Shown here piece by piece: positions 4,203 to 21,648 of a DNA stretch of 64,000 nucleotides. Every line of letters starts with the position of its first letter. The stretch's first letter is position 1. The translations under genes were made by a program, and so were the position numbers. The stretch lies in IMG/VR virus record IMGVR_UViG_3300046787_000200, positions 62,001 through 126,000 of that record, one strand, 5' to 3'. The notes beneath the pieces were generated by a model that saw nothing but the letters and a program-made list of their open reading frames with translations, was not told where the DNA came from and made no database searches.

Positions 4203-4246
4203 ATGGTATACGGAACTAAATAAAAAGATCCCGTAATATTATCACA

Positions 4247-5536
4247 ATGTCTATATTAGAAAAAGCCTCTACCAGTAAAACCTTTTGCATATACCCATGG
4301 ATACATCAGTATGTAGGCCCTAAAGGTGACGTTAAACCATGTTGTTTATTCAACCCTAATAAAGATGGTATAGGTAGTCTTAAAGAAAATACGCTTAAAG
4401 AAATATGGAACAATGACGCAACAAAACAAATGCGTTTAGATATGCTTAACGGAGTCACCATAAAAGGCTGTGAAAAATGTGACAGTCGTGAGGGTATTAT
4501 TGCTGTTCACCGTGATGAAGCAAATAACAATTGGTACTATCAATCTAAAGATATATTAGAACAAACCAATGAAGATGGATCATTGCCCACACATCAATTA
4601 AAATATATTGATGCAAGATTCAATAATCTATGCAATTTTAGATGTAGAACATGTGGCCCTAGATTTAGCACATCATGGAATGAAGATTATCAAGCATTAC
4701 GATCTCCGAATTCGATGAATGAGTTTCCTAAAACACTTATTTTTCCCGGTAACACTAAAGATCAATTATTAGATGAGATATTAGAGCATTTACCTTATGT
4801 CAATCGTATCTACTTTGCAGGTGGTGAACCGCTCATGCAAGCAGAACACTATATAATGTTAGAAAAGCTATTAGAGTTAAAAAATGATGGTATAATTAAT
4901 AAGATGCCAATCATTGTTTATAGTACTAATTTCAGCACATTGCGATTGGGTAATAGATCAATTATTGATTTATGGAAACACTTCCCTACATTGATTCTCA
5001 ATTTAAGTATTGATGGTAGCTATGAACGTGCAGAATATTGGCGTAAAGGTACAGATTGGCAAGCAATTGTTGATAATTTAAAAGAAGTAAAAAACAATAT
5101 ATCACATGCTCAAATTAATATTAATTACACATTGTCATGGGTTAATGCATTTAATTTAACAGAATTGCATAAAGAATGGGTAACACTAGATTATATAAAT
5201 CCAAATAAAATAAATGTCAATTGTTTGGATGACCCGTCGTTTTATTCTTTGAAGTCTATTCCAACATGGAAGAAACAAAGTATTGAACAAAACTTTTTAC
5301 AGCATATTGAATGGTTAAAAAATAATAGACCTAATATGAATAGAAGAATCTATGATAAGACAATTAAGCAATTTACAGATGCAATTAGTTTTATGAATAG
5401 TTATGATTCTGGTAATGACTTTATTCATAAAAGAGAATTTAATGAAATGAATGGGCAATATGACAGAATACGTAACGAAGATTTTTTAAAGGTATTCACA
5501 GAACATATTGACATGCAACAATTTATACAAAAATAA
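4247..5536 (+). CDS. N-terminal twitch-domain radical SAM protein
   Basis: CIYPW...VKPCC...CEKC; CNFRCRTC; GGEP. Confidence 0.9.
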   Translation: MSILEKASTSKTFCIYPWIHQYVGPKGDVKPCCLFNPNKDGIGSLKENTLKEIWNNDATKQMRLDMLNGVTIKGCEKCDSREGIIAVHRDEANNNWYYQSKDILEQTNEDGSLPTHQLKYIDARFNNLCNFRCRTCGPRFSTSWNEDYQALRSPNSMNEFPKTLIFPGNTKDQLLDEILEHLPYVNRIYFAGGEPLMQAEHYIMLEKLLELKNDGIINKMPIIVYSTNFSTLRLGNRSIIDLWKHFPTLILNLSIDGSYERAEYWRKGTDWQAIVDNLKEVKNNISHAQININYTLSWVNAFNLTELHKEWVTLDYINPNKINVNCLDDPSFYSLKSIPTWKKQSIEQNFLQHIEWLKNNRPNMNRRIYDKTIKQFTDAISFMNSYDSGNDFIHKREFNEMNGQYDRIRNEDFLKVFTEHIDMQQFIQK

Positions 5537-5548
5537 CGAGAGACATTA

Positions 5549-6730
5549 ATGGATTTAACACCTTACAAAAATTGCCTAGCATTAAAAAATAGTATTTTTA
5601 TTGCCAACGAAGAAAAGCCATATCGCCCATGTTGTTGGTTTAAAACATATATAGATGCAACAGATGTTGATGACTATAAAAAACAGTTAAGTGAATTAGA
5701 TTTGGAATACAACTGTGATTATTGTATTAAACAAGATCAAGGTGGGCAATATAGCTATAGACAAATGTTTGGTGATCCAAACGAGATGGTTATCACGGCT
5801 TCATTTGATAACATATGCAATTTAAAATGTGTCACTTGCACACCAAATAACAGTACACAAATCCTTGCAGAAAGATTTAAGTTTGATGAAAAAGTTGAAG
5901 CAGAATATGCTAGAAAGTATATCACTGAGGTAGTAGCTAAACAAGCACCTAAGAAAATCGACTTTATAAAAACAACACTAGCAAATGCTAGTTTTAACAG
6001 ATTGCGATTTGATATATTAGGTGGTGAACCATTGATTAACCCAGCCATCTTTGAATTTATGGATTGGTTATCAGATCAACCTTATGCACATAAAACAACA
6101 GTGGCGATTACTACTAATGGAACCACTTACACCGACAAGCTAATTAAGTACCTTAATAAGTTTCAACGTGTGGGAGTGCAAACTAGTATAGATGGTATAG
6201 AAGAAGAATTTGAATATTTACGTTATGGATCATCATTTGAAAATTTAGAACAAGTATGTAATAAATTCTATGCATTGAAAAAACAATATTCTAATTTTGG
6301 TATGGGAACTCATTACACATTATCATGGATGAATTGTTTAAACTTTGCAGAATATTTTAATTGGTCACAAACTAACTACCCTGATATTGAAATTTATGTA
6401 AGTAAGTTACAAAGTCCTGATCATTATTCTATTGAATTATTGTCATTAGAAATGCGAACGCAAATATATAATGAAACAATGAGAAAGATACACACTCCTG
6501 TAAATGCATATTATGAGAAAGCTTTGTTCTTATATAAAGAACATATGTTATCTACAGCGTATGATGAATATAACGAAAAATTATTACAGCACGGCATGTC
6601 TACACTAAACGTTATTGATTATAGACGTAATGCCGATCATAGAAAGATAATTAAAAACTTTGTTAACTTTTTGTCATTAAATAAGAAAAATCCATGGTTC
6701 AACTATGTCATGGATAAAAACCCTAAATAA
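5549..6730 (+). CDS. Radical SAM protein, paralogue of 3012..4202
   Basis: PYRPCCWF...CDYC; CNLKCVTC; GGEPLINP. Confidence 0.88.
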   Translation: MDLTPYKNCLALKNSIFIANEEKPYRPCCWFKTYIDATDVDDYKKQLSELDLEYNCDYCIKQDQGGQYSYRQMFGDPNEMVITASFDNICNLKCVTCTPNNSTQILAERFKFDEKVEAEYARKYITEVVAKQAPKKIDFIKTTLANASFNRLRFDILGGEPLINPAIFEFMDWLSDQPYAHKTTVAITTNGTTYTDKLIKYLNKFQRVGVQTSIDGIEEEFEYLRYGSSFENLEQVCNKFYALKKQYSNFGMGTHYTLSWMNCLNFAEYFNWSQTNYPDIEIYVSKLQSPDHYSIELLSLEMRTQIYNETMRKIHTPVNAYYEKALFLYKEHMLSTAYDEYNEKLLQHGMSTLNVIDYRRNADHRKIIKNFVNFLSLNKKNPWFNYVMDKNPK

Positions 6731-6739
6731 GAAACGAAT

Positions 6740-8056
6740 ATGATAGATAAAAAAATTGAAGATTTATCACCACATTTTTGCAGTGTGCCGTGGCTGCAAA
6801 TACACACTGAACCCAACGGGAAGGTATTTCCCTGTTGCTATTATAGCTTTGATGCAAAGCATGATTTGGGTAATTGGAATAAAGAAAAGCTATCTGACAT
6901 TTTCAATAGTACTAAATGGAATCAACTACGCAAAGATTTCTTAGATGGTAAGAAACCAGACCAATGCACACGTTGTTGGAAAGAAGAAGATTCAGGTTCA
7001 ACTAGTATGCGTCAACGTTTCAATGAAAGATATAGCGATTTCCCTGACTATACAAATCAGAATGGTTACAATAAACTAAAAGATATTATTACATATACCA
7101 ATGATGATGGGTCAGTCGGTGATATAAAATTGGCAACGATTGATTTAATCTTTAACAACTTGTGTAATCTCAAGTGCAGAACATGTGGTCCTGGATTAAG
7201 TACTGGTTGGATCCCTGACCAGATTAAACTAGGTAGATATCAGATTAACCCTACATCATTGATAACAAATGACGGTGTGTTGCATATGCAAGAGGATTTG
7301 GATTATCTGATTGATATGATAGATCCATACACAGAAATACATTTTAGTGGTGGTGAGCCGATGATGCAAGAGGAACACTATCTATTCTTAAAGTTATTAG
7401 TTGAGAAGGGTAAAACTAAAACTAAAATAAGATATAATACTAACCTTACAGTTTATACACTTAAAGACTATAACGCATTTGAAATGTTAAAGCACTTTGA
7501 TAATGTTTTCATTGTGGGTAGTATTGATGCAATGGGTAGTGAAGGTGAATATATACGTAAAGGATTTGATTGGGAGTTAGCTAAAAAGTGGATAGAGACT
7601 GCCAAAGAATATCTACCTAAAGCAGATTATGGAATCAGTGCTGTGTTCAGTTTATTGAACTGTTATGGATCCGTTGACCTACATAGATATATGTGTGAAA
7701 GTGACACGTTCAAAAGACCTGACGGTAGACAATTTGGATTCTATTTAAATACATTACATGCTCCATCACAGTTAAGAACTAAAATATTACCACCTAGCGT
7801 AAAATTAGAAGTAACAGAAAAGATTAATAAGCATTTAGAGTGGTTAGCAGAAACACAAGAACGTGATTTCAACTATGATGTAACAGTAGCACATTGGAAA
7901 GATGCAATTCAGTTTATGAATAGTGAAGATGAGAGTAAGCAATTACCAAGATTTTATGCGGAAACTGAATTGCTAGATGACATTAGAAAAGAAAAATTTA
8001 GTGATGTGTTCCCTTATTTAGATTCAAAAATTAAAGAGTTTTTAGCAAATGAATAA
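6740..8056 (+). CDS. N-terminal twitch-domain radical SAM protein
   Basis: CSVPW...FPCC...CTRC; CNLKCRTC; GGEP. Confidence 0.9.
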   Translation: MIDKKIEDLSPHFCSVPWLQIHTEPNGKVFPCCYYSFDAKHDLGNWNKEKLSDIFNSTKWNQLRKDFLDGKKPDQCTRCWKEEDSGSTSMRQRFNERYSDFPDYTNQNGYNKLKDIITYTNDDGSVGDIKLATIDLIFNNLCNLKCRTCGPGLSTGWIPDQIKLGRYQINPTSLITNDGVLHMQEDLDYLIDMIDPYTEIHFSGGEPMMQEEHYLFLKLLVEKGKTKTKIRYNTNLTVYTLKDYNAFEMLKHFDNVFIVGSIDAMGSEGEYIRKGFDWELAKKWIETAKEYLPKADYGISAVFSLLNCYGSVDLHRYMCESDTFKRPDGRQFGFYLNTLHAPSQLRTKILPPSVKLEVTEKINKHLEWLAETQERDFNYDVTVAHWKDAIQFMNSEDESKQLPRFYAETELLDDIRKEKFSDVFPYLDSKIKEFLANE

Positions 8057-9362
8057 TAATTTTAATCCAGTCGAACTAGCAAAGAACAGTAAAACATTTT
8101 GTATTTTTCCATGGATACAACAATATGTTGGTCCACCCGGTGATGTTAAACCATGCTGTGTATATGACAACAAAGATGAGATAGGTAACTTAAAAGAAAA
8201 CACATTAGCAGAAATTTGGAACAACGATAAGACTAAACAGATGCGTTTGAATTTTCTGAATGGAATAGAAGAACCGGGATGTAGTATTTGCAACAGACGA
8301 GCAGAACTGGGTCATGCACATAAGAATGAATATAATAGAATATTCTTTGATTCTGATGCAGAAATTCAGAAAATAGTAGCAAGTACAAATATAGATGGAT
8401 CACTCGATGAACATAAACTTTACTATATTGATGTACGTTATAATAACTTATGTAACTTAAGTTGCCGTAGTTGTGCTCCGCACTTTAGTACTAGCTGGGT
8501 ATTGGATCATAGAAAGTTGTACAATATACAACATAAAAGAGATAAAGATGATGGATTTCAATTTCCGGGCAAGACTGAAGAACAAGCATTAGAAGAAATA
8601 TTACCGCATTTGGCTACTGCAAAGATGATTTATTTTGCAGGTGGAGAACCATTAATGCAAAAAGAACATTATGAAGTTCTTAATAAGTTGATAGAGTTGG
8701 GTAATACTGATTTAGAAATACGTTATAATACAAACTTCAGCAATCTTAAATTGAAAAAATATGATAACGTAATTGAATATTGGAAGAAGTTTTCTAATGT
8801 GCATGTATATGCTAGTTTAGACGGTAGTCATGCGAAAGGTGAATATTGGCGTAATGGTATAAATTGGGACCAAGTAGTAGAAAACCGTAAACAAATGATG
8901 AAAGAATGTCCGCATGTTAATTTTATGATTTCATATACATTGAGTTGGCCTAATGCATTGAACTTAGTAGAGTTCCACAGAGAATGGGCTGATTTGGGCT
9001 ATTTGAAACCAGAACACATGTTAGTAAACCCATTAGATACACCATCATATTATTGTTTGAAGAATATTCCTGATTGGAAGAAACGTGAAATAGAAGAAGC
9101 GTTGCAGAAAAACATAGCATGGTTGAAATCTTTTGGACAACCTTTTGGAATCATAAGTATGTATGAAACTGCAATTAAGTTTATGTGGGATGATACCGGA
9201 AAATATAGTTATGGTGTTGATGAAAGCTTGAAAGAGTTTAACAAAATAACTACAAAGTTAGATGATATACGCAATCAAAATTTCTATACAGTATATCCAG
9301 AACACATAAACATTAAAAATTATTTGACACAAAACAATTTAAATGTTGAGTTTAATTATTAA
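8049..9362 (+). CDS. N-terminal twitch-domain radical SAM protein, paralogue of 4247..5536
   Basis: SKTFCIFPW...VKPCC...CSIC; CNLSCRSC; GGEP. Confidence 0.9.
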   Translation: MNNNFNPVELAKNSKTFCIFPWIQQYVGPPGDVKPCCVYDNKDEIGNLKENTLAEIWNNDKTKQMRLNFLNGIEEPGCSICNRRAELGHAHKNEYNRIFFDSDAEIQKIVASTNIDGSLDEHKLYYIDVRYNNLCNLSCRSCAPHFSTSWVLDHRKLYNIQHKRDKDDGFQFPGKTEEQALEEILPHLATAKMIYFAGGEPLMQKEHYEVLNKLIELGNTDLEIRYNTNFSNLKLKKYDNVIEYWKKFSNVHVYASLDGSHAKGEYWRNGINWDQVVENRKQMMKECPHVNFMISYTLSWPNALNLVEFHREWADLGYLKPEHMLVNPLDTPSYYCLKNIPDWKKREIEEALQKNIAWLKSFGQPFGIISMYETAIKFMWDDTGKYSYGVDESLKEFNKITTKLDDIRNQNFYTVYPEHINIKNYLTQNNLNVEFNY

Positions 9363-10615
9363 TGGATGAAAAGAAGCTATTTAAAATAAGAGATGAGACT
9401 AGTCCAACTATGTGTTTGGCTAAGTTCCATGAGGCTAGTATTTGGGTTTACTCAGGTAAGATAGCCAGCTGTCACTACACTCCGTTCATACAAGTAGGTA
9501 ATACAGTAGATACATTCTACAATCCTACTGAAAAACGTGAACAACAAAAACGTATGCTTGCAGGAGAACAACCACCTGCATGTGATAGTTGCTGGCGTTA
9601 TGAGAACTTAGGATTGCGTAGTGATAGAACACGTAAGAGCTTGAGCTTCAAGGATCACTTATCAGCAGAAGATTATAAGAATCCTAACTATGTATTCAAA
9701 CCAAAAGCATTAGAGTTAGCTTTTCAAAATACATGTAACTTAGCATGTAGCTACTGTAGTCCACAATTCAGTACAAGCTGGATGAATGATATCAGAGTAA
9801 ATGGTGTTTATCAACAAATCGTTACAGATGATCGTAGACATTATCAAAAAGATATCAATGAAATCAATGAGATGATTGACCCTCCTGACATGACATTGTT
9901 CTGGGAATGGTTTGAAACTGTTGCAACTAGTTTAGAATCTATCCGTGTTTCGGGCGGAGAGCCACTAATGCATGAAGAAGTTTTTCGTGTGTTTGAGATG
10001 ATGACAGAGATGAACCCTAACATTGAATGCGTGATACACAGCAACCTCTGTCAAAAGCCAGTAGTTATGGATAGATTCTTTGATAAGATTAGTGGCTTAA
10101 CTAACTTGCGTATGAACATTAGTAATGAATCTGCAGGTGAAACAGCAGAATTTATACGTGAGGGTATGGTATATACTGAATGGTTAGAAAATATTGAACG
10201 ATTGGCTAATAGTACAGTAAGAGAATTTAGTGTAAGCACAACAGTTAGTGCAATTGCATTACAATCATTAGATCAAATGTATTTGGATATTATTGCTATT
10301 CGTAATCGTAGTAAAGTAAAGCCATATATATCTATCAATATGGTTGATAAGCCAGACTTTCAGGGCTTTGCTTGTTTAACTAGAAGTGAACGTGATTTCT
10401 ATATTGATAAATATACCAAGTTCTATGAATCAATTAACCATGAATTGTTACCAGTTGAACATGAACACTGTGCTAGATTGTTAAAGTTCTTAGATGAAGG
10501 GTTTGTTAAAGAAACACAACCTCAATTGCGTAAAGACAGTGATATCTTTTTTGAACAATATACTAAACGTAGAAACAAGCCAGACAATTTGGCAAAATAT
10601 ATAGGATTAAAATAA
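9362..10615 (+). CDS. N-terminal twitch-domain radical SAM protein
   Basis: CLAKF...SCHYTP...CDSC; CNLACSYC; GGEP. Confidence 0.88.
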   Translation: MDEKKLFKIRDETSPTMCLAKFHEASIWVYSGKIASCHYTPFIQVGNTVDTFYNPTEKREQQKRMLAGEQPPACDSCWRYENLGLRSDRTRKSLSFKDHLSAEDYKNPNYVFKPKALELAFQNTCNLACSYCSPQFSTSWMNDIRVNGVYQQIVTDDRRHYQKDINEINEMIDPPDMTLFWEWFETVATSLESIRVSGGEPLMHEEVFRVFEMMTEMNPNIECVIHSNLCQKPVVMDRFFDKISGLTNLRMNISNESAGETAEFIREGMVYTEWLENIERLANSTVREFSVSTTVSAIALQSLDQMYLDIIAIRNRSKVKPYISINMVDKPDFQGFACLTRSERDFYIDKYTKFYESINHELLPVEHEHCARLLKFLDEGFVKETQPQLRKDSDIFFEQYTKRRNKPDNLAKYIGLK

Positions 10616-11787
10616 TGGAAGAACAGATGTATGATATAAATTGTGTGACGAGATTGCACATTGAGTTATCAAGTAGATGTAATGCTAGTTGCCCTGCATG
10701 TAGTAGAAATCATAGCGGTGGCCCTGTTGCAGAAGATTTAGAACTTACTGAGTTATCAATCGATGATATCAAACGTATGGTTCCAGTAGAGATTGCACGA
10801 AATATAAAAAGTATTAATTACTGTGGCAATGTTGGTGATCCAGGTATGGCACCTGATCTATTAGAAATCATACAATATTTTAGAGAACATTCACCTAAGG
10901 TCGTACAACAAATTAGAACAAACGGTGGAATGCGCAACCCTGAGTATTGGACTAAGTTGGGTAATTTCTTTGCAAGACAAGCAGATCCCAATAATAAGTT
11001 CTTATTTAACATGGCAGGGGTAGTGTTTAGTGTTGATGGATTAGAAGATACTAATCACATTTATCGCAGAGGTGTTAAATGGGAAAAGTTAATTGCTAAC
11101 ATGAGAGCATATAGTGCTACCGGTGCATATGCTATATGGGAGTGGTTGATATTTGAGCACAATCAACATCAAGTTGAAGAAGCAAGAGCATTAGCAAAAG
11201 AATTAAATTTTCAGTTTATTGTTAAGAATCCACTAGGATTCGGTGAATATGATGGTAAAGTTAAGGGCTTATCTGTGTATAACAAAGAAGGTGCGTATGA
11301 GTACTCTATTTGGCCTGCTAATCACAAAGGTCCCAAAGAAGGACCAAACTTTGGTGAGAAAGTAGATTTCACTAAAATGATTAAAACGATTCCTATCATA
11401 AATGAATTCAGTAAAGAATTAGAAAAAACTTCTACAATAAAATGTAAGTCAATTGAACGTAAAGAATCACAAGAAGTTTATATCTCTGCTACTGGATACA
11501 TGCTACCATGTTGTTTCTTGGGAGGTGTATTTGGACAATTTAATAGTTCTTATAGTAGATATCAATTTAATACAATGATTAATGATTATGGATTGGATGT
11601 GTTTAATTTAAACAAACGTTCAATGTTAGAGATAATTAAAGGTCCTGAATTTTCAAAATTCTTTTTAGATGGTTGGAAAGCAGATACGATTGAGAATGGT
11701 AAATTGTTATTTTGTTTAGAAACATGCGGAAATCAATCTGCTATGGATAAATTATATAGAACTAAGATGATAGAGGTATCAAAATGA
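10615..11787 (+). CDS. Radical SAM protein with C-terminal SPASM/twitch cysteines
   Basis: N-terminal CNASCPAC; CGNVGDP in place of GGEP; C-terminal IKC...LPCC...CLETC. Confidence 0.88.
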   Translation: MEEQMYDINCVTRLHIELSSRCNASCPACSRNHSGGPVAEDLELTELSIDDIKRMVPVEIARNIKSINYCGNVGDPGMAPDLLEIIQYFREHSPKVVQQIRTNGGMRNPEYWTKLGNFFARQADPNNKFLFNMAGVVFSVDGLEDTNHIYRRGVKWEKLIANMRAYSATGAYAIWEWLIFEHNQHQVEEARALAKELNFQFIVKNPLGFGEYDGKVKGLSVYNKEGAYEYSIWPANHKGPKEGPNFGEKVDFTKMIKTIPIINEFSKELEKTSTIKCKSIERKESQEVYISATGYMLPCCFLGGVFGQFNSSYSRYQFNTMINDYGLDVFNLNKRSMLEIIKGPEFSKFFLDGWKADTIENGKLLFCLETCGNQSAMDKLYRTKMIEVSK

Positions 11788-12533
11788 GAATAGGTGTATT
11801 TGGTGATAGTTTCGCAGATAGAAACCCATACAATCCAGAAAGTCCCTTTAAGGAAGATGAATCATGGATGAAATGTATGGAAGATTCAGGACATGAAATT
11901 ACTACGTATGGGAAAACTGGTACTTCAACATGGTATTCGTTTCAACAATTCTTAGCACACCATGATCAATTTGATCATGTTATATTCTGTTATTCATCAA
12001 TGCATAGAATACATCATTTGCCAGAAGGACTTGAAGATTTAAGTTTCTTGACCACACCCGATCAACTTTATGAATTGAGAAAAAATAAAAACTTAACTCA
12101 ACGACAAGAATTGGATATAGTAAGAATACTTACAGGTCACGTACCTAACATTAGTACTACGTTTGACTTGTTTGTTAAGCAACATATATTTGATGAAGTT
12201 AATAATCTATGTAGAAATAAAAACATCAAGTTAGTTAATCTACTAACATTTGATGATAGAAAAGAAAAAAATTATTCTATTGACCTAGCGTTAAGAGCAG
12301 GTGATTGTTTATATAACTTATTTGAAGTAAGTCGTAGAGAATTACCTAGTATGGATAGAGTAGATAACAGATGGTGTCATTTATCACACGAATTAAATCT
12401 ATCATTGTCTGTACTATTAAGTCAATCTCTTAACAGTAAAGAATTACGCATTTTAGATTTACGCAAACATCCGGAATTTAATAAAGTTAACTATGATATC
12501 ACCTTGAGGTATATGAATGAGCCAACTACGTAA
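11784..12533 (+). CDS. SGNH/GDSL-like hydrolase or acyltransferase
   Basis: N-terminal FGDSF and late R-x-CH motif. Confidence 0.65.
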   Translation: MRIGVFGDSFADRNPYNPESPFKEDESWMKCMEDSGHEITTYGKTGTSTWYSFQQFLAHHDQFDHVIFCYSSMHRIHHLPEGLEDLSFLTTPDQLYELRKNKNLTQRQELDIVRILTGHVPNISTTFDLFVKQHIFDEVNNLCRNKNIKLVNLLTFDDRKEKNYSIDLALRAGDCLYNLFEVSRRELPSMDRVDNRWCHLSHELNLSLSVLLSQSLNSKELRILDLRKHPEFNKVNYDITLRYMNEPTT

Positions 12534-13263
12534 GATTATCACTTTGGGTGATAGTTTTACGTTTGGACATGGGTGTGCAGACCGTGAATATTACTATGAC
12601 CATGATACTAAAACATTCATAGGTGATCATAGACCTTTTAAAGAAAATATTCCTAGTCAATATTGTTGGCCTACTTTACTTCAGCAACATATGCATGAGG
12701 TTGAAGTTATTAATTTATCGCAACCGGCAAATTCCAATCAGGGACTATTCCGTAACTTATTAACCTATTGTGAAACCAACACAATTAATGAAGGTGATAT
12801 TATCATCTTTAACGGATCATTCCCGGGTAGGATAGACATTGCATCAGGTGCTCGTCCTGAAGTTACTGTTCCTTGGGTCATGGGTTGGGATCACCAATCA
12901 CAAATGGAAAATGAAATTGAATACAATGTTGCTAAAAAAATGTACATAACACATTTATTCAATGATTCAATAGGATATACACAATCATTGTCATCAGTAT
13001 TAGCAACACATGCATTTGCTACAATGTATAAAGCAAAGTATATTTGGTCATTGCCCAATCATGTTTATCCAAAAGAAGTTCTGGATAAACTAAAACCAAT
13101 TAATCATTTACGAATAACAGACTTATGTAAATATGATTTTTCTGGCACTAACACATATGATTTTAACAAAACTTGTTTTGCTCCCGATTATCACGTGAAT
13201 AATTTGGGACATTCTATATACTTGCAAAAACAAATAATCCCCGTCATACAATCCCTTCTATAA
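12517..13263 (+). CDS. SGNH/GDSL-like hydrolase
   Basis: GDSFTFG, NLS-x-P-x-x-SN, DYHVNNLGH. Confidence 0.75.
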   Translation: MSQLRKIITLGDSFTFGHGCADREYYYDHDTKTFIGDHRPFKENIPSQYCWPTLLQQHMHEVEVINLSQPANSNQGLFRNLLTYCETNTINEGDIIIFNGSFPGRIDIASGARPEVTVPWVMGWDHQSQMENEIEYNVAKKMYITHLFNDSIGYTQSLSSVLATHAFATMYKAKYIWSLPNHVYPKEVLDKLKPINHLRITDLCKYDFSGTNTYDFNKTCFAPDYHVNNLGHSIYLQKQIIPVIQSLL

Positions 13264-13271
13264 ATATCGTA

Positions 13272-14621
13272 ATGAATAATAATGAACAAATAGACAATCC
13301 AGACTCTGAATTCGTTGAAAAGAAAGTATTTCCCATACAAAACGAAGCCGCATGCTTGTACAAATGGGCATGGAGTACTATTTTCTTAAGCAGAGGTACA
13401 ACATCAAGTTGCCATAGAGGTCGTCATTGGAGATTGACTGAGGATAACTTCATGGATTTTCATAACCATCACGGTAAATTAGCCGACAGAGAAAAAATGT
13501 CGAGTGGGGAATGGCCTGGTAATGGTTGTGAGTACTGTAGAGATATAGAAAAAGCAGGTGGAACTAGTGATAGATCAGGATTTGTAAATGAATCAATAGA
13601 ACTATTACCACCTGAGTTTGAAGGATATGTACAGCGTATATATGAATATGATACTATCCCGTTAAAAGTAAGTCCTACACTATTAGAAGTTTATTTTAAC
13701 AATGTATGTAATCAATCATGTGTCTATTGCACTCCTGGATTTAGTAGTCAGATTGAACAAGAGGTTCGCAAATACGGGCCTAGCAAGTATAATGAAGATT
13801 ACAGCACATGGCGTCCTGATTCAAAATACGAATTGTATAAAGAAAAGTTTTGGGAATGGATGGCAAAGAATAGTGAGCATGTACAGATATTACAAGTATT
13901 AGGCGGTGAGCCACTATATCAAAAAGAGTTTGAACAATGTTTAGATTTCTTTGACAAGAACCCTAGACCTAATTTAGTATACCGTTCATTTAGTAATCTA
14001 AAACACGATCCTGAAAAGTTTAAAGCAAAGATACAGCGAGTACAAAACTTGATTGATCAAGGTAAATTAAAACGTATGGAAGTTGTATGTAGCATTGATT
14101 GCTGGGGTCCGGAAATTGAATATGTACGTGATGGCTTGATACTAGCCGAATGGGAAGAAAACATGAACACATTGTTAACGACTCCTGGTATGGGAGTATT
14201 AGTTCATGCTACACTTACTGCATTAACGTTGCCTACATTGAATCAATTGATAGAGAAAACAAATGAATGGCGTAAGATAAAAGATACAGTAGGTATCAAT
14301 TGGAATACAGTTGTTAGACCATCAACATTCAATCCATATAATTTTGGTAAATATTTGGCACCGTTTATTGATAGATCGATTGATGCATTAAATTACTATA
14401 GTAACCATGTAGAGAAAGAAAAGTTACAGACACACTTACGTGGTATACAACAACAGTTATTAACTACACCCGCAAATAAAAAAGAAGTTAATGACTTTGC
14501 TAACTTCTTAGATGATATAGACAAACGTAGAAATAGAGATTGGCGAACATTATTTCCGCAAATTGTAGATATTGTAAATATTATAAACAAAGAGGAACCA
14601 GACTATGTTCAAGTGGATTAA
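13272..14621 (+). CDS. N-terminal twitch-domain radical SAM protein
   Basis: CLYKW...SCHRG...CEYC; CNQSCVYC; GGEP; TATAAATA 5 nt upstream. Confidence 0.88.
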   Translation: MNNNEQIDNPDSEFVEKKVFPIQNEAACLYKWAWSTIFLSRGTTSSCHRGRHWRLTEDNFMDFHNHHGKLADREKMSSGEWPGNGCEYCRDIEKAGGTSDRSGFVNESIELLPPEFEGYVQRIYEYDTIPLKVSPTLLEVYFNNVCNQSCVYCTPGFSSQIEQEVRKYGPSKYNEDYSTWRPDSKYELYKEKFWEWMAKNSEHVQILQVLGGEPLYQKEFEQCLDFFDKNPRPNLVYRSFSNLKHDPEKFKAKIQRVQNLIDQGKLKRMEVVCSIDCWGPEIEYVRDGLILAEWEENMNTLLTTPGMGVLVHATLTALTLPTLNQLIEKTNEWRKIKDTVGINWNTVVRPSTFNPYNFGKYLAPFIDRSIDALNYYSNHVEKEKLQTHLRGIQQQLLTTPANKKEVNDFANFLDDIDKRRNRDWRTLFPQIVDIVNIINKEEPDYVQVD

Positions 14622-14709: not shown

Positions 14710-15518
14710 TTCCGCTGAATAATTTATTGGACTCACAAGACTTTAGTGAGGTAATTCCGTATACAAAAGTCGAGCATAAAACATTATCAATTGATGCATA
14801 TACTACTGATTTTGCATCATTTGATGATATGAAATATGCTGAGTACTGGCAAGGAGAGCAGTTCAATTATTTTTATAATAGATATGGATTCAGAGATATT
14901 GATGTTATCCCTGAATCCATAGACATAGGTGCATTTGGTTGTAGCTTCACTGCCGGGTTAGGATTACCGGAACATATGCTTTGGCATAAACTGTTAGGCA
15001 CCTCATCATACAATTTTGGTGTGTCGGGTGCTAGTACTAAATCAGTGTTTGATTTGTTTTTAATAACATCTAAACATGTTAAAATGAAAAATGCTATATT
15101 TTTACTACCAAGTTTAAATAGAGTTCAAATTGCGGCGACAAATCCATTATTGTCCAGAATATCTTATTTGTCAATTGTCCCTTCGCATAAAAGTGAATTA
15201 GCATTAGTACATGGGGTTGATAGTGAGTTGGTATACAAAGTATTACCGGAAGAAGAACAGATAAAAAACTTTAGAAACGATGCATACATCATAGATCATA
15301 TAGCAAAAGAACGTGGTATTAATGTATATCTGTCTACTTGGGACAGTCTTACATATGAAGTATTGGCACAATTAAAATTTACACATTGTACTGTATTGCC
15401 AGTATGGGGTTCTCTCTCACAGGAACAAGCAGAATCAGATTTAGCTAGAGATAAAAAACATCCGGGGCCAATACATCATCAGCAATGGGTTGACAAAATT
15501 AAACATTTAATAAAATGA
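14706..15518 (+). CDS. SGNH-like protein
   Basis: NRYGFRD, FGCSFTAG, NFGVSGAS, ARDKKHPG. Confidence 0.7.
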   Translation: MIPLNNLLDSQDFSEVIPYTKVEHKTLSIDAYTTDFASFDDMKYAEYWQGEQFNYFYNRYGFRDIDVIPESIDIGAFGCSFTAGLGLPEHMLWHKLLGTSSYNFGVSGASTKSVFDLFLITSKHVKMKNAIFLLPSLNRVQIAATNPLLSRISYLSIVPSHKSELALVHGVDSELVYKVLPEEEQIKNFRNDAYIIDHIAKERGINVYLSTWDSLTYEVLAQLKFTHCTVLPVWGSLSQEQAESDLARDKKHPGPIHHQQWVDKIKHLIK

Positions 15519-17020
15519 ACTACATAGGAATATCAGCCGGATTCCATGATGCGGCATTATCAGTTATTGACGATAGTGGCAATATATTATTTGCTGGACA
15601 TAGTGAACGTTATAATAAACAGAAACATACAAAACACTTATCAATTGGTATAGTTGAAGATGCATTATCGTATTGCAATAGCAGAGATATACAGATTCAT
15701 TACTATGAACGCCCGTGGATGAAGTTTCTACGACAAGTTCGTTCAGGTGAAAAGCCTAAGTTATCTAGTCTATTGCTTAAAGAAACAATTGGTACTGGAT
15801 TACTACACAAACTACAAGATGGCCGTGGGGGTAAAGTACATACTCACAATCATCATTTAAGTCATGCGGCTGCAGGGTTTCAAACAAGTCCATATGATGA
15901 TGCTACAGTAGTTGTTATTGATGCTATTGGTGAGTTCGACACTATCAGTATTTGGAACGCATACTATGACAAGAACGGTGTAGCACAATACAAAAAACTA
16001 TGGGGACAGAAGTACCCAGATAGCATTGGCTTATTCTATTCGGCAATGACAGAACGAGTGGGTTTGCGACCATTAGATGAAGAATACATTTTGATGGGCA
16101 TGGCGGCATATGGTAAGTCAAACCTAAAACAAGAATTAAAAGAAATGTCCGATACATTAATACGATCATATAAAGATATTACTTTTAAAGACAATCTACA
16201 TACGGGTGTGTCAGATGATTTGCTTAAAGATACAGACCATATGGATATTGCTTGTAGTACACAATTGATCGCAGAACAATTGATTGCATCTGTTATCAGT
16301 AGAGCAAAAAGTTTAAGTAATAGTAAGAACTTAGTATATGGTGGTGGCGTAGCATTAAATTGTTTAGCAAATAGATTATTAGGAAACTTTTATGACAACA
16401 TTTGGATTATGCCTAATCCTGGCGATGCTGGTTCTAGTCTTGGAGCGGCTTGTCTTGGTTATGGCAAACGTATTAACTGGACTGATGCTTACCTTGGTCA
16501 TAATATTCTTGGTCAGTATCCTGTCAATCAGTTATTGGATCATCTTACTACCACTGGCATTGTTGGTGTGGCTAATGGTCGTGCTGAGTTCGGACCTAGA
16601 GCCCTTGGACATAGAAGCCTACTTGCAGACCCAAGAGGAACAGAAATAAAGGATAAAGTAAATGAAATTAAACGTAGGCAAAAGTTTAGACCCTTTGCGC
16701 CAGTCATTCTGGAGGAGTATGCTGATATGTATTTTGATATGCCTCGTGGCTTCAGTAACAGTAGGTATATGCAAGTCATCGCTCGTTGCAGGCATCCTGA
16801 CTTATTTCCTGCTATCGTTCATAATGATGGTACTAGTAGGGTACAGACTGTGCCAAGGGATGGCTCCGGAATACGAGGACTATTAGAGAAATGGTATGTA
16901 TTGACAGGTTGCCCGATGTTGCTTAATACTAGCTTAAACATACGAGGCGAGCCAATGGTAAATGACCGAAACGATGCAGATCGCTTTGAAATAATGTATA
17001 ATGTAAAAGTTATATCATAA
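15515..17020 (+). CDS. Carbamoyltransferase (NodU/CmcH/TobZ family)
   Basis: GFHDAA, HHLSHAAA, GGVALNC, PGDAG, EFGPRALGHRSLLADPR, RPFAP, LLNTSLN. Confidence 0.95.
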   Translation: MNYIGISAGFHDAALSVIDDSGNILFAGHSERYNKQKHTKHLSIGIVEDALSYCNSRDIQIHYYERPWMKFLRQVRSGEKPKLSSLLLKETIGTGLLHKLQDGRGGKVHTHNHHLSHAAAGFQTSPYDDATVVVIDAIGEFDTISIWNAYYDKNGVAQYKKLWGQKYPDSIGLFYSAMTERVGLRPLDEEYILMGMAAYGKSNLKQELKEMSDTLIRSYKDITFKDNLHTGVSDDLLKDTDHMDIACSTQLIAEQLIASVISRAKSLSNSKNLVYGGGVALNCLANRLLGNFYDNIWIMPNPGDAGSSLGAACLGYGKRINWTDAYLGHNILGQYPVNQLLDHLTTTGIVGVANGRAEFGPRALGHRSLLADPRGTEIKDKVNEIKRRQKFRPFAPVILEEYADMYFDMPRGFSNSRYMQVIARCRHPDLFPAIVHNDGTSRVQTVPRDGSGIRGLLEKWYVLTGCPMLLNTSLNIRGEPMVNDRNDADRFEIMYNVKVIS

Positions 17021-17028: not shown

Positions 17029-20000
17029 ATGTTAAGAGATGTATTTTATTTCGGAGATAAACCCAACGTTCACCCAAGAGAAAAGTTTGCAGTAGATTTA
17101 GCTGATGCTAAACGACAGTCAACCACTGAGCACTTTTGGATAATTAACGAACATTGTAATTATAAAGATTTTGATTGGGACTGGGACTTTGATTTCCTAC
17201 CCGATGAAGATGTGTGGGCAGAAGAACACAACAATGTTTGGCCTAGCCCCTATCAGAAAGATAGTGGCACTTGGTTATGCAATGCAGACAATGATGAACC
17301 ACTAACAATCTATCGTGCAGACGTAGATCCTATTCCATTAAAAGATGAAGTAACAAGTAACTGGAAGATCATTGAATATATTGAAAAAGATAAATTTGAT
17401 TTTAAATGGCATCCAGACCCAACTGACCCTCCCTACATATATGTATTTGGTAATGAATGGTATCCCGGGACTATTATGCCCACAGTTGAATATCATGTTG
17501 AAGGTGCAACAGAACGTAAATATGTAACTGATCAAATAGCTCAACTATTACCAATGCCAATGTTGTTCAATATCATATATGAACCGGCGGAGTTTGATTA
17601 TAGTTGGAGACCAGACCCTACAGCACCACCTTATATCTATGTATTTGGTAACAATCAATATCCTGCAAGTGTGATGCCAACGGTTGAGTTTCATGTTGAA
17701 GGTGCAACAGAACGTAAGTTTATTGAAAATATTGTTCCTAAGTTGGCAGCAAGACCTGCAGAATTTGATGTATTAGAAGATATAGATCAGTCATCATTTG
17801 ATTTTAGTTGGGTCCCTGATCCTACTGCGCCTCCTTATATATATGCTTGGGGTAATCAATGGAACAAGCCAGAAGATAAAATTAGTGTTCAGTATGTAGC
17901 AGAAGGTGCGACAGAATACAAATACATGGATGCACGTACTAAACGTAAGGAGTCAATGAATAATTGGAACATACCACCTAATATGTTTCAAAATAAGTTT
18001 GATTTTAGTTGGGAACCTAGTCCGGCTGATCTACCGTTCATATATCAATTTGGTACTCAATGGCAAAAAACACATGGTCCTCAATATATTGTAGAAGGCG
18101 CTACCGAGATAAAATATGTTGACGTATTAAAAGCAGAAGTTGTATGTACTGAGTTTGAAAATTGGCAAGTACCTAGAAACATTGACCAATCTAAGTTTGA
18201 TTTTAGTTGGCATCCCGATAGCACAGAAGAACCATACATCTATCAATTTCCTGATCAGTGGACCAGAACCGGTGGACCTAGATATGTCGTACCCGGCGCA
18301 ACTGAAATCAAGTACATAGATGTGCAGACAGCAACAGCTAAACATGACAAGACACACTGGGTTATACCTGATGATATTGATGTTAGTGAGTTTGATTTTA
18401 GTTGGCACCCCGACATAGATCACGCACCATTGATATATCAATTTGGAACTCAGTGGCAACGAACTAGTGGACCTAAGTTTTATGCAGTCGGTTGCACAGA
18501 AGATAGTGATATACAATATGTTGACATTATCAAAGCTAAAGCTTTGCCTAATAAAGAATTATGGCAAACATTAATCTCAGTAGATAATTTTGATTATAGC
18601 TGGCATCCAGATGAAACTGAAGAACCCTACATATATGTTTTTGGCAATCAATGGAATCGTGCTGAAGTAGAACCTACATTAATATATGAGATGCCTGGAG
18701 CAACACATAAAAAGTATATTAATGACATTGGTATTAAAGCATCTGCATATGCTGAAGGTTGGGAAACAATTGAAGATATTGAATCATTTGATTACAGTTG
18801 GAGACCTGATCCAGGGGATCCCGCATACATATATGTATTTGGTAATAAGCAATATGATGGCACAATTATGCCCACAGTTAAATTACATATCAAAGACGCT
18901 ACACAAGAAAAGTTTGTTGATGATATTGTTGCAACATTGGCACAACGTCCCGATCTATTTAAAAACACAGAACTAATCAAAGACTTTGACTATTCATGGA
19001 GACCAAACCCTAAAGACCCACCGTATGTATATCAGTTCGGGACACAATGGGCTAAAACACATGGACCTCAGTTTATTATACCTGAAGCTATTGAGACAAA
19101 ATTTATTAACTATCCAGTTGCAACAATATTGCCTGATATGACACACTGGGAAATACCAGAGAATGTTGATGTTACTAAGTTTGATTTTAGCTGGCACCCA
19201 GATGGTACTGCACCCGCATACATCTATCAATTTGGCACACTGCTTGATGATAAAGATGGTCCTAGATATATTACACCTGATAATGATGGTATAGTTGTTA
19301 ATTTAGAGCGTAAAGAAATCATATTAGAAGAATTGATATTCCCTAAGTACAATATAAAGACCACACTAGAAGATTTAATAAACGAACATGAAGGTGAAAT
19401 CTTTTGGGCTATCAACCCTGAACTTGACTACTCAAACTTTGATTTCAAGTGGGTACCTGATAAACAAAATGTCTATCACATTAATGCATTCGGTAGTAAA
19501 GATAATATCAACACACAGACTTATTTTGTCAATGGTAAAATGTGGCAGAAAGGCTACCGTGATATTAATTACGTTGAAGATAAAGTAATTGATGTTAGAA
19601 CTAAAATTGATATGTTCTTTGTTGACAGAGGTAATAGTCAATCACAAGAACGATTCAATAAGCTAAAGGCAAAGTTTGATAACATCACTAAAACACGATA
19701 CTTGAACAGTTGGGTTGATACAATTAATCGGTGTATTACTAAGTCAAGTACAAACTTGTGCTGGATATTGAACAGTGAGCTTGACTATGATGATTTTGAG
19801 TTTGATTACTATCCTAGTCCATGGCAAATGCGCATGGTTCATGTGTTCGGTACTCAGTGGAGTCATTGGGGCACAACGTTTATGGTTAACAAACATAGCT
19901 TCAGTGAAGATACAAAATATGTTAAAGTTATTGAACATTTAAGTAATCTTAACTTTGTCAAACGTAAGACTGCTAAAGCAACTAATTGTTTGTATGACAT

Positions 20001-21312
20001 ATATTTGATAGACCATGGAAATGAGTTACCAAAAGACATTAAAGGACATAATTATACTACGGTCAAATATGAACGTAGTTACTTAAACACATTTAAGAAT
20101 TTAGTAAAGACTTTACCGGACAAGAAAGAACATTATATTTGGATATGCAGTAGCGTATGTGATTATGAAAACTTTGATTTTGGTTATATTTGTGATCCAT
20201 ATGCCAAAGATCAATTACATGTATTCCCAAGCGACAAACAAAAGTTTGGAGATACTTTCCTAATTGATGTAAATAAGTTACGCACATTAATTGATGATAT
20301 GATTATGTTGGAAGATTATGAGAAGGTCAACTATAATCAACATCAAAGGGCGAAACGTTTACCTGCCCCTATTATTATTACGAAAGAAGATACACATGTT
20401 AACGATATTCATACTGACTTTGATTGGCCTTACGCTACGTTTGTCACGGAAGACAATAAAGAAATACAAGTAACAGATGTAGAACCAATGAGTTTATGGA
20501 CACCTGATAGTAAAAATATTATTATTACTAGTACCGGTGCAACACGAATCATTGTACCTAAAGAAGCAAAAGATTATGTAGAGAATGAGTTGTATGATTA
20601 TCCATACATCAGCCGTAGTAAATCTCTAGTTAAATCTCAGCCACTGGATATAGTCTTCCTAAGCAACGGTGAAACTGGTGCTGACGAGAACTACGAACAT
20701 TTACTGAAAGTGACTACGGGATTAAAGAATAGAGTTGTGCGTGTAGATGGCGTTAATGGTCGTGTACAAGCCTATCATGCGGCAGCAGAAGCAAGTAACA
20801 CGCCATGGATGTTCACCGTGTTTGCTAAGTTACGTGTTGATGATAAATTTGATTGGTCATGGCAACCTGATAGACTACAAGTACCCAAGCATTATATCTT
20901 TAATGCAACAAACCCTGTCAATGGATTAGAGTATGGTCACCAAGCTATGATTGCTTATAACAAGAAGATTACATTAGCTAATACTGGTAGAGGGCTTGAC
21001 TTCACATTAGATGACGAACATGAAGTTGTTGAAATGAATAGCGGTATAGCTATGTACAATACAGATGCCTGGAGTACATGGCGTACTGCATTTAGAGAAG
21101 CACTAAAACTAAGAGCCGATACTAGCCAAGCAAGTAAAGATAGATTAGATGCATGGTTAAATAAAGGCGAAGGGAACTTTGCCCAATATAGTTGTGAAGG
21201 TGCGCAACATGCTATAGAATACTATGAATCAGTTAATGGTGATTTAGATAAATTACGTCTAAGTTATGATTGGCCTTGGTTGAAAGAGTATTTTAATAAT
21301 AAATACAATTGA
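17029..21312 (+). CDS. 1427-aa protein with internal tandem repeats and C-terminal glycosyltransferase(GT-A)-like domains
   Basis: About 10 FD(F/Y)SWxPDx4PYIYxFG repeats; C-terminal DIVFLSNGE...RVDGVNG...YHAAA...WRTAFRE. Confidence 0.75.
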   Translation: MLRDVFYFGDKPNVHPREKFAVDLADAKRQSTTEHFWIINEHCNYKDFDWDWDFDFLPDEDVWAEEHNNVWPSPYQKDSGTWLCNADNDEPLTIYRADVDPIPLKDEVTSNWKIIEYIEKDKFDFKWHPDPTDPPYIYVFGNEWYPGTIMPTVEYHVEGATERKYVTDQIAQLLPMPMLFNIIYEPAEFDYSWRPDPTAPPYIYVFGNNQYPASVMPTVEFHVEGATERKFIENIVPKLAARPAEFDVLEDIDQSSFDFSWVPDPTAPPYIYAWGNQWNKPEDKISVQYVAEGATEYKYMDARTKRKESMNNWNIPPNMFQNKFDFSWEPSPADLPFIYQFGTQWQKTHGPQYIVEGATEIKYVDVLKAEVVCTEFENWQVPRNIDQSKFDFSWHPDSTEEPYIYQFPDQWTRTGGPRYVVPGATEIKYIDVQTATAKHDKTHWVIPDDIDVSEFDFSWHPDIDHAPLIYQFGTQWQRTSGPKFYAVGCTEDSDIQYVDIIKAKALPNKELWQTLISVDNFDYSWHPDETEEPYIYVFGNQWNRAEVEPTLIYEMPGATHKKYINDIGIKASAYAEGWETIEDIESFDYSWRPDPGDPAYIYVFGNKQYDGTIMPTVKLHIKDATQEKFVDDIVATLAQRPDLFKNTELIKDFDYSWRPNPKDPPYVYQFGTQWAKTHGPQFIIPEAIETKFINYPVATILPDMTHWEIPENVDVTKFDFSWHPDGTAPAYIYQFGTLLDDKDGPRYITPDNDGIVVNLERKEIILEELIFPKYNIKTTLEDLINEHEGEIFWAINPELDYSNFDFKWVPDKQNVYHINAFGSKDNINTQTYFVNGKMWQKGYRDINYVEDKVIDVRTKIDMFFVDRGNSQSQERFNKLKAKFDNITKTRYLNSWVDTINRCITKSSTNLCWILNSELDYDDFEFDYYPSPWQMRMVHVFGTQWSHWGTTFMVNKHSFSEDTKYVKVIEHLSNLNFVKRKTAKATNCLYDIYLIDHGNELPKDIKGHNYTTVKYERSYLNTFKNLVKTLPDKKEHYIWICSSVCDYENFDFGYICDPYAKDQLHVFPSDKQKFGDTFLIDVNKLRTLIDDMIMLEDYEKVNYNQHQRAKRLPAPIIITKEDTHVNDIHTDFDWPYATFVTEDNKEIQVTDVEPMSLWTPDSKNIIITSTGATRIIVPKEAKDYVENELYDYPYISRSKSLVKSQPLDIVFLSNGETGADENYEHLLKVTTGLKNRVVRVDGVNGRVQAYHAAAEASNTPWMFTVFAKLRVDDKFDWSWQPDRLQVPKHYIFNATNPVNGLEYGHQAMIAYNKKITLANTGRGLDFTLDDEHEVVEMNSGIAMYNTDAWSTWRTAFREALKLRADTSQASKDRLDAWLNKGEGNFAQYSCEGAQHAIEYYESVNGDLDKLRLSYDWPWLKEYFNNKYN
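17395..19290 (+). repeat. Ten diverged ~60-70 aa protein repeats
   Basis: Recurrent FD(F/Y)SW(H/R)PD, P(Y/F)IY(V/Q)FG, GATE-x-K(Y/F); recurrent ttgattttagttgg at DNA level. Confidence 0.9.
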
Positions 21313-21648
21313 AGTTATTGCTGTATGAAGCAAAGAGAAAAGTGTCTTGGACGGGGGTGCGAATCCCCCCAGGTCCACCATAAAACACATTAAGCCTGGG
21401 TTGCCGGGTCAGTAGACATGCAGGGTTACCTTGCGTCACTTCTGAAAAATAGTGTGTTTTATGATGGGCCTGACCTAGATTCGACAGGGCAACAAGTAAA
21501 TTAGTGGACAGCTCGGCAACGCAGAAGCCGTCAGGGTTGGGGGTTCCCGACTATAGAAGCACAAAAGTAAACGCAAACGACTCACAGTTCGCATTAGCAG
21601 CCTAAACGCCGCTTAGGGTAAGACATACCTCGTAACAGAAAATCAGAT
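21311..21648 (+). ncRNA. ssrA: Circularly permuted (two-piece) tmRNA; tag peptide ANDSQFALAA
   Basis: Acceptor piece first (T-arm GGGGG-TGCGAAT-CCCCC, CAGGTCC-ACCA ending 21380), intervening segment 21381-21465, then 5' end GGGCCTG at 21466 (G3.U70 Ala identity), GATTCGAC, tag frame 21573-21605; outer ends approximate. Confidence 0.92.

What the first reader, a model, noticed from the sequence alone, without database searches (positions are those of the whole stretch)
17029..21312. Giant repeat protein built from glycosyltransferase-like fragments
Seen: ten ~65-aa repeats (FDxSWxPD...PYIYxFG...GATE) in two subtypes (MPTV-type and GPxY-type). The same FD(F/W)xW/YxP element recurs inside longer GT-like units at both ends. 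The last unit has FTVFAK where a DxD motif would be expected. Inference: a catalytically degenerate, multivalent sugar-binding or scaffold protein organising the enzymes upstream. Less likely, it is a repetitive Trp/Tyr-rich substrate for the radical SAM enzymes.
Basis: partly seen in the sequence, partly recalled or inferred. Interest (0 to 1): 0.65.

Follow-up and report, generated by a model that had tools for sequence, protein, structure and literature searches.

The report
Jumbo-phage repeat-bearing glycosyltransferase-like giant protein
This 1427-residue protein of an uncultured freshwater jumbo phage joins ten copies of a new 66-residue beta repeat to a strongly conserved sugar-transferase-like domain whose usual metal-binding motif is replaced by an invariant lysine; it belongs to a large, unnamed, almost phage-only family of unknown function.

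Summary
ORF 17029-21312 (+) encodes 1427 aa with exactly ten tandem 65-68-aa repeats in two subtypes. The same FDxxW core recurs in five longer units.

AlphaFold models are confident (pLDDT 95 and 89). The longer units have GT-A (nucleotide-sugar transferase) folds. The repeats are beta-rich and match no solved structure.

FAK sits exactly where a paralogue in the same genome and Ralstonia phage RsoM2USA gp348 carry a true DGD motif.

"Catalytically degenerate" is not supported for the last unit. Over 257 homologues its polar residues are invariant or nearly so (E1215, K1267, H1288, N1295, Y1302, H1304, D1324, R1356, E1357, K1360). That pattern fits a re-tooled, probably metal-independent active site better than a dead one.

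The family is large and nearly phage-only, with no Pfam, PHROG or NCBIfam model. There are 1847 hits in the word search and at least 555 IMG/VR loci, against 3 loci in 185,579 prokaryote genomes.

Repeat number runs from 0 to 29. A NodU-type carbamoyltransferase lies within 50 nt upstream in 36 of 53 loci. Related phages keep nearby radical SAM clusters whatever the repeat number.

Best reading: a glycan-pathway transferase with pseudo-GT-A modules and an extendable repeat arm. The acceptor is unknown.

The parts
17029..21312 (+). Whole ORF, 1427 aa (P0001). Acidic (pI 4.8); no hydrophobic segment long enough for a membrane helix or signal peptide.
17029..17370 (+). N-terminal unit, aa 1-114. 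A truncated GT-A-like module with INEHCNY at the DxD-equivalent strand, followed by the FDxxW core.
17371..19353 (+). Array of ten 65-68-aa repeats, aa 115-775. Boundaries: aa 115, 181, 249, 316, 382, 447, 513, 579, 645, 710, ending at 775. Subtype order is M M m G G G m M G G (M = MPTV long loop, m = long-loop variant, G = GPxY short loop).
   Evidence: Modelled for R1-R5 at pLDDT about 95, beta-rich. No PDB fold or sequence match. Net charge -52.
19354..20328 (+). Three short GT-A-like modules, aa 776-1100. They carry NPE, NSE and SSV where DxD would be, each followed by the FDxxW core.
20329..20625 (+). Beta-rich linker with a conserved YDYPYI motif, aa 1101-1199.
   Evidence: Secondary structure of the model; consensus in alignments A1 and A2.
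20626..21309 (+). Conserved C-terminal GT-A domain plus helical bundle, aa 1200-1427. This is the probable catalytic core.
20821..20829 (+). Codons for F1265-A1266-K1267, the position of the DxD motif.
   Evidence: Aligns to DGD in the same-genome paralogue and in RsoM2USA gp348. Lys in 254 of 257 homologues.
15515..17020 (+). NodU/CmcH-type carbamoyltransferase, the conserved upstream partner gene.
   Evidence: Pfam Carbam_trans_N and Carbam_trans_C; PHROG 1601. Within 50 nt upstream on the same strand in 36 of 53 related loci, and within 1 kb in 42 of 53.
560..14621 (+). Ten radical SAM genes, mostly of the N-terminal-twitch family. Two SGNH/GDSL-like ORFs (11784-12533, 12517-13263) lie among them; a third (14706-15518) follows.
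   Evidence: The GDSF-type motifs were read from the translations only.

Best explanation
The protein is a soluble, phage-encoded enzyme of the GT-A (nucleotide-sugar transferase) fold superfamily. It works in a phage glycan-building and glycan-tailoring gene island.

The C-terminal 230 aa are the working domain. The ancestral metal-binding DxD motif has been replaced by [F/P/N]-[A/G]-K, with an invariant lysine. The lysine, together with new invariant histidines, probably takes over the role of the metal in neutralising the donor's phosphates. This step is inferred.

The N-terminal unit and the three short GT-A-like modules are non-catalytic derivatives of the same fold.

The 66-aa repeats are duplicated copies of the beta segment that follows the DxD strand in the GT-A-like units. 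They form a stiff acidic arm of lineage-specific length (0-29 units). The arm either holds a polymeric acceptor or product multivalently, or sets a distance; this too is inferred.

The co-transcribed NodU-type carbamoyltransferase would then carbamoylate the transferred sugar (inferred). The acceptor is not known: it could be a virion protein, a host envelope glycan or something else.
For: Fold: a confident model (pLDDT 95.2, pTM 0.85) whose significant matches are all GT-A-fold enzymes.

Descent from a DxD enzyme: a paralogue in the same genome and RsoM2USA gp348 have DGD where this protein has FAK, and they share the NGL-YG and WR-FRE motifs.

Selection on a site:
- Y1302, G1303, D1324, R1356, E1357, K1360 and W1376 are identical in 257 of 257 homologues.
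- E1215 and N1295 are kept in 255 of 257, and K1267 in 254 of 257.
- The C-terminal 652 aa are 58-85% identical across homologues, while repeats within this protein are 24-55% identical to one another.

Glycan context:
- carbamoyltransferase directly upstream;
- SGNH-like ORFs;
- a sugar epimerase and an aminotransferase in the window;
- UDP-glucose dehydrogenase, sulfotransferase, GT4 and DegT genes beside relatives.

Modularity: forms with 2-3 repeats plus the catalytic domain occur in comparable neighbourhoods.

The protein has no membrane segment.
Against: - No sequence model of any glycosyltransferase family matches.
- Loss of DxD is also what a pseudo-enzyme would show.
- The model coordinates could not be inspected, so clustering of the invariant residues in one pocket is assumed, not shown.
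- No donor, acceptor, expression or virion data exist. No RNA run held the gene.
- A function for the repeats has no direct support.
Confidence: 0.5

Rival explanations
1. One reading: the whole protein is catalytically dead. It acts as a multivalent sugar-binding protein or as a scaffold that organises the neighbouring enzymes.
For: DxD is absent in every GT-A-like unit. Pseudo-GT-A scaffolds are known and appear among the fold matches: the accessory domain of LH3 and CHPF in the CHSY3-CHPF complex. The gene is tightly coupled to the carbamoyltransferase gene. The repeats are aromatic-rich and acidic.
Against: The last unit has invariant charged and polar residues over 257 homologues, including the Lys that replaced DxD. 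Decayed sites normally drift. Relatives with 2-3 repeats still sit beside clusters of radical SAM genes. Repeat number does not track the number of neighbouring enzymes. No lectin or carbohydrate-binding fold was found.
Confidence: 0.2
2. A virion or cell-surface-directed structural protein (fibre, decoration or adhesin). Its GT-A-fold head binds a host glycan rather than making one, and the repeat arm is a stalk.
For: Vaccinia H3, an envelope protein with a glycosyltransferase fold, is among the weak fold matches to the N-terminal unit. Repeat number varies from 0 to 29, as stalk length does in fibres. Tail-fibre-like ORFs and a 3094-aa ORF lie about 25-40 kb upstream in the genome. The inter-repeat geometry is predicted with fair confidence (pTM 0.70).
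Against: No PHROG structural family matches. The gene sits in an enzyme operon, not among head or tail genes. Only the most abundant virion bands of RsoM2USA were identified, and gp348 is not among the ORFs named, so virion data are uninformative.
Confidence: 0.15
3. One reading: the Trp/Tyr-rich repeats are substrates that the neighbouring radical SAM enzymes cross-link or otherwise modify.
For: There are ten radical SAM genes upstream and ten repeats. Radical SAM clusters lie next to the gene in four related complete jumbo phages. The only cultured relative, RsoM2USA gp348, is preceded by a radical SAM of the same family.
Against: The numbers do not track: 16, 6, 11, 8 and 7 radical SAM genes go with 10, 9, 9, 10 and 13 repeats. 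RsoM2USA gp348 and the same-genome paralogue sit beside radical SAM genes, and neither shows a stretch outside the catalytic domain long enough for a repeat array. The enzymes are the N-terminal-twitch type. The repeats are folded beta domains at pLDDT about 95, not linear peptides.
Confidence: 0.05

Closest known systems
GT-A fold glycosyltransferases (for example B4GALNT1, WrtF fucosyltransferase, SunS/ThuS, and the PBCV-1 A064R and Mimivirus R699 viral enzymes)
   Different: There is no DxD; an invariant Lys sits in its place. No sequence model matches. A C-terminal helical bundle and an N-terminal repeat array are added.
Metal-independent GT-A enzymes such as GT14 C2GnT-L (from general knowledge, not tested here)
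   Same: A GT-A fold working without DxD, with basic side chains neutralising the diphosphate. This is the mechanism proposed here for K1267.
   Different: No sequence or specific structural match was obtained. The analogy is an inference.
Multi-GT-A proteins with non-catalytic GT-A-like domains: LH3/PLOD3 accessory domain, CHSY3-CHPF, chondroitin polymerase K4CP
   Same: Several GT-A-like domains in one chain or complex, some lacking DxD and acting structurally. These are the best Foldseek matches to the 652-aa C-terminal model (K4CP, E 8e-5).
   Different: TM-scores are low (0.1-0.2) because the domain arrangements differ. None of these proteins has a tandem array of part-domains.
Processive GT2 synthases (hyaluronan synthase, BcsA)
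   Different: There is no membrane segment, no literal QxxRW and no DxD. rmsd is 4.5-5.0 Å.
Same-genome paralogue (G000:C1:54611-55564) and Ralstonia phage RsoM2USA gp348
   Same: The same domain family: the profile hits the paralogue at E 7.8e-20 and tblastn hits gp348 at 1e-12. Both lie next to N-terminal-twitch radical SAM genes.
   Different: They keep DGD and have YGN instead of YGH. The alignment shows no room in either for a repeat array or extra modules.

Membership tests
GT-A fold (nucleotide-diphospho-sugar transferase) superfamily | Rossmann-like alpha/beta/alpha fold of the GT-A type | tested here: met
GT-A fold (nucleotide-diphospho-sugar transferase) superfamily | DxD metal-binding motif at the end of the central strand | tested here: not met
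   FAK lies at that position; the paralogue and RsoM2USA gp348 have DGD there. It is Lys in 254 of 257 homologues. Metal-independent GT-A families also lack DxD, so this does not exclude the fold superfamily.
GT-A fold (nucleotide-diphospho-sugar transferase) superfamily | Binds a nucleotide-sugar and transfers the sugar | not testable with these tools
   Needs biochemistry.
Pfam Glycos_transf_2 (GT2) and other curated glycosyltransferase families | Match to the family profile above its cut-off | tested here: not met
   No Pfam, NCBIfam or PHROG hit for the protein. PF00535 finds nothing in the whole phage genome. The nearest named Atlas cluster is GT2 at 0.86, which is a lead only.
Processive membrane GT2 synthases (BcsA/HAS/NodC type) | Membrane channel helices and a Q(Q/R)xRW motif | tested here: not met
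   Maximum hydropathy is 0.96 over 19 residues, with no window above 1.6. No QxxRW occurs; only a conserved WRTAFRE helix is present.
Known carbohydrate-binding or cell-wall-binding repeat families | Sequence or fold match of the 66-aa repeat to a described repeat | tested here: not met
RiPP-type precursor / radical SAM protein substrate | Substrate number or presence tracks the modifying enzymes; substrate motifs are accessible | tested here: not met
   Radical SAM counts and repeat counts do not track. Relatives whose alignment leaves no room for a repeat array also sit beside radical SAM genes. The repeats are modelled as folded domains.
NodU/CmcH carbamoyltransferases (the neighbour gene 15515-17020) | Both the Carbam_trans_N and Carbam_trans_C domains | tested here: met
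   E 5e-34 and 1.1e-46; PHROG 1601, E 2.8e-94. The NodU equivalog itself is far below its cut-off (133 against 1000 bits), so this is a family member, not NodU.

The most novel reading that the evidence does not exclude
A phage-only class of metal-independent GT-A transferase in which duplicated fragments of the enzyme's own acceptor-side subdomain form a rigid, evolvable arm of 0-29 units. The arm would work as a molecular ruler or polymer clamp, setting the length or spacing of a carbamoylated glycan that freshwater jumbo phages lay down on their virions or on the infected cell.
Probability: 0.1. Interest if true: 0.8.

Novelty: new variant of a known kind. Interest (0 to 1): 0.55.

Why it matters
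This is a very large protein family: 1847 word-search hits, 833 clusters at 50% identity and at least 555 IMG/VR loci. It is almost confined to large uncultured phages and has no name, no profile model and no studied member.

It combines three unusual things:
- a GT-A domain that swapped its DxD for an invariant lysine while close relatives keep DxD, a natural pair for studying how metal dependence is lost;
- a new beta repeat apparently derived from a piece of the enzyme itself;
- a conserved operon with a carbamoyltransferase inside an island holding up to 16 radical SAM genes.

If the protein is active, freshwater jumbo phages carry their own elaborate glycan-decorating machinery. That is known for giant eukaryotic viruses and for some mycobacteriophages, but not for this group. 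RsoM2USA gp348/gp349 offers a culturable entry point.

Tried and rejected
Family and sequence searches that found nothing
- Pfam, PHROGs and NCBIfam scans of the whole protein gave nothing.
- A Pfam scan of 28 diverse homologues gave only stray hits, including one RmlD fragment fusion.
- PDB sequence-profile searches with the C-terminal region and with the repeat gave nothing meaningful.

Cultured phages
- megablast against 50,697 records gave no match.
- tblastn, both with this protein and with a divergent family member, found only RsoM2USA.
- The RsoM2USA paper has no data on gp348.

Literature
- Searches for jumbo phage, radical SAM, SPASM, carbamoyltransferase and twitch radical SAM found nothing relevant.

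Fold searches of the repeat model
- PDB Foldseek, the VIA wide search, the ESM Atlas and BFVD returned only uncharacterised viral relatives or weak matches to the N-terminal unit.

Ideas considered and set aside
- DNA as the ligand of the repeats: rejected because the array is strongly acidic (net -52).
- Assembly artefact or recent DNA duplication: rejected.
- The 'joints' seen in two runs have short flanks and come from short contigs of related phages or from other repeats. They were not taken as repeat-number polymorphism.

Other
- Context look-ups for three short family members mostly hit contigs too short to inform.
Full report
**Setting**

The window is bases 62001-126000 of a 352,012-bp IMG/VR phage record that CheckV rates as complete. 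Near-identical copies of the gene occur in freshwater, estuary and aquatic metagenome runs from 12 studies; two of the runs may be the source sample. In a run from another study, one 4582-nt contig spans the whole gene with 40 substitutions and no gaps. The gene is therefore real and its repeat array is stable.

**The observation**

ORF 17029-21312 (+) encodes 1427 aa. Its start lies 8 nt after the stop of the upstream gene.

The FDxxWxP core occurs ten times at 65-68-aa spacing, at aa 123 to 718. The ten units are 24-55% identical. They split into a long-loop MPTV type (R1, R2, R8; R3 and R7 are variants) and a short-loop GPxY type (R4, R5, R6, R9, R10).

The same core is found once in each of five longer units, at aa ~48, 804, 923, ~1050 and 1274. 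A repeat HMM detects three of these at i-E 6e-8 to 8e-6. Tandem Repeats Finder sees nothing at the DNA level, so the copies are old and maintained as protein.

**Structure of the C-terminal region**

The C-terminal 652 aa were modelled with an alignment of 83 diverse homologues. The result was pLDDT 95.2 and pTM 0.85.
- All Foldseek matches with E <= 0.001 are GT-A glycosyltransferases: K4CP, ArnC, SunS and WrtF. LH3 and Mimivirus R699 follow just above that threshold.
- The residue-range realignment shows two well-tested domains.
- Nucleotidyltransferases score almost as well as glycosyltransferases on the last domain. Fold alone does not fix the chemistry.

**Structure of the N-terminal region and repeats**

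The repeats match nothing in PDB. In the ESM Atlas and BFVD they match only uncharacterised viral proteins. I could not fold one repeat alone, so 'no known fold' is provisional.

**Is the last unit dead?**

This is now shown directly.
- The genome holds a 317-aa paralogue at G000:C1:54611-55564.
- Ralstonia phage RsoM2USA gp348 is the only relative among 50,697 cultured-phage records.
- Both align over the whole domain and carry DGD exactly at F1265-A1266-K1267.

The family therefore descends from a DxD enzyme. But the FAK branch is not decaying. Over 257 full-length domains drawn from two searches:
- K1267 is Lys in 254;
- E1215 and N1295 are kept in 255;
- H1288 is kept in 248 and H1304 in 246;
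- Y1302, G1303, D1324, R1356, E1357, K1360 and W1376 are kept in all 257.

The C-terminal region is 58-85% identical across homologues, whereas repeats within this protein are 24-55% identical to one another.

A lysine replacing the metal site, with co-occurring changes (YGN to YGH, and a KH pair), fits a switch to metal-independent catalysis. From general knowledge, some GT-A families such as GT14 work this way. This is my inference. It needs coordinates and biochemistry.

**The other units**

The N-terminal unit and the modules at aa 776-1100 lack DxD; they carry NEH, NPE, NSE and SSV at that position. They are short, about 85-125 aa each. One of them is recognisably homologous to the catalytic domain: the domain HMM hits aa 858-942 at i-E 4.5e-6.

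They resemble the non-catalytic GT-A-like domains of LH3 and CHPF, which are among the fold matches. The repeats align with the segment that follows the DxD strand in every GT-A-like unit. They look like duplicated part-domains of the enzyme itself.

**Family and distribution**

- The word-indexed search found 1847 proteins at E <= 1e-3, all unnamed, of 1423-2455 aa within its length window.
- The exhaustive search with the C-terminal region found 833 clusters at 50% identity.
- Their lengths and matched ranges suggest nested architectures: domain alone (~300 aa), plus linker (~440), plus one module (~540), plus two (~650), and then repeats.
- 185,579 prokaryote species genomes hold three, all on MAG contigs.
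- Repeat number in complete ORFs runs from 0 to 29. Arrays seem to grow by internal blocks such as M-G-G-G.
- Wherever a complete small form was seen, the repeats sit N-terminal to the catalytic domain. Forms with 2-3 repeats directly joined to it exist on 52-137 kb phage contigs.

**Gene context**

A NodU/CmcH-type carbamoyltransferase lies on the same strand within 50 nt upstream in 36 of 53 related loci that have enough flank. It lies within 1 kb in 42 of 53.

The ten radical SAM genes upstream are mostly the N-terminal-twitch family NF033640. The phage has 16 radical SAM hits in all. Four related complete jumbo phages have 6-11, clustered by the gene.

Those counts do not follow repeat number, which is 9-13 in these phages. 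A 2-repeat relative still sits by five radical SAM genes, a sulfotransferase and a GT4. RsoM2USA gp348 follows a homologous radical SAM, gp349 (24% identity, E 1e-31). The link is therefore between this domain family and twitch radical SAMs, not between the repeats and radical SAMs.

Other neighbours are glycan-type:
- three SGNH-like ORFs, judged from motifs read;
- a sugar epimerase, an aminotransferase and two more radical SAMs at 34350-38514;
- UDP-glucose dehydrogenase and DegT beside relatives;
- a NodS-like methyltransferase after the paralogue.

**Physical properties**

The protein has no membrane or signal segment. The repeat array is strongly acidic (net -52, pI 4.5), which argues against nucleic acid as its ligand.

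**Conclusion**

The most likely reading (0.5) is an active GT-A-type transferase of a phage glycan pathway. It is flanked by pseudo-GT-A modules and carries an extendable repeat arm, and it works with the adjacent carbamoyltransferase. The acceptor and the role of the arm are open.

The rivals are:
- a dead scaffold or lectin (0.2);
- a virion stalk with a glycan-binding head (0.15);
- a radical SAM substrate (0.05).

It is a new variant of a known kind: a known fold in an undescribed, phage-restricted family with a new repeat and an altered active-site motif.

Noticed in passing
window 21279-21671 (+): A phage-encoded tmRNA of the betaproteobacterial type (Rfam beta_tmRNA, 106 bits, E 4.6e-33). 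ARAGORN gives the tag peptide ANDSQFALAA. It overlaps the last ~34 nt of the giant gene. It hints at a betaproteobacterial host.
   Followed up: partly
window 21712-21786 (+): A tRNA with anticodon CTA, which would read the UAG stop codon (ARAGORN labels it tRNA-Pyl; Rfam tRNA 35.7 bits). Whether the phage recodes TAG was not examined. The ORFs studied here are open under table 11.
   Followed up: no
window 3-14621 and 36561-38514; genome G000:C1:56166-62563: An unusually large set of radical SAM genes: 16 Pfam hits in the genome, most in one run. They are mostly the N-terminal-twitch family NF033640, whose substrates are unknown. Related complete jumbo phages have 6-11.
   Followed up: partly
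G000:C1:54611-55564 (L089:5212-6165), about 6.4 kb before the window: A 317-aa paralogue of the C-terminal domain that keeps a DGD motif. It is followed by a NodS-like methyltransferase, three radical SAM genes and a short-chain dehydrogenase.
   Followed up: yes
window 24249-25133 (+): A Gram-negative porin gene (Porin_4, E 1.4e-22) carried by the phage. A homologue is present in 17 of 84 related loci and next to a 2-repeat relative (L092).
   Followed up: partly
window 25985-28610 (+): A MoxR/CobS-like AAA ATPase and a DUF2201 (VWA/metallopeptidase-like) pair. The pair is conserved downstream of the giant gene: 43 and 35 of 84 loci respectively.
   Followed up: partly
window 33201-34100 (+): A thymidylate synthase homologue (PHROG 160). 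Whether it is a true ThyA or a pyrimidine hydroxymethylase was not checked.
   Followed up: no
P0385 (165-aa fragment on a 1098-nt metagenome contig): One repeat unit appears fused to a heparinase II/III-like Pfam domain (PF07940). This is the only hint of the repeat beside a different polysaccharide-active domain. It is a single fragment and may be a gene-calling artefact.
   Followed up: no
L004, L005 (Haliscomenobacter MAG); L006 (Fischerella MAG): The only 'prokaryote' copies of the family lie on MAG contigs of 183, 148 and 19 kb. These may be jumbo-phage contigs binned with bacteria.
   Followed up: no
G000:C1:40078-52376: A 3094-aa ORF and two ORFs whose N termini look tail-fibre-like by eye lie upstream. 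Two 257-275-aa ORFs without any Pfam hit follow, just before the paralogue.
   Followed up: no
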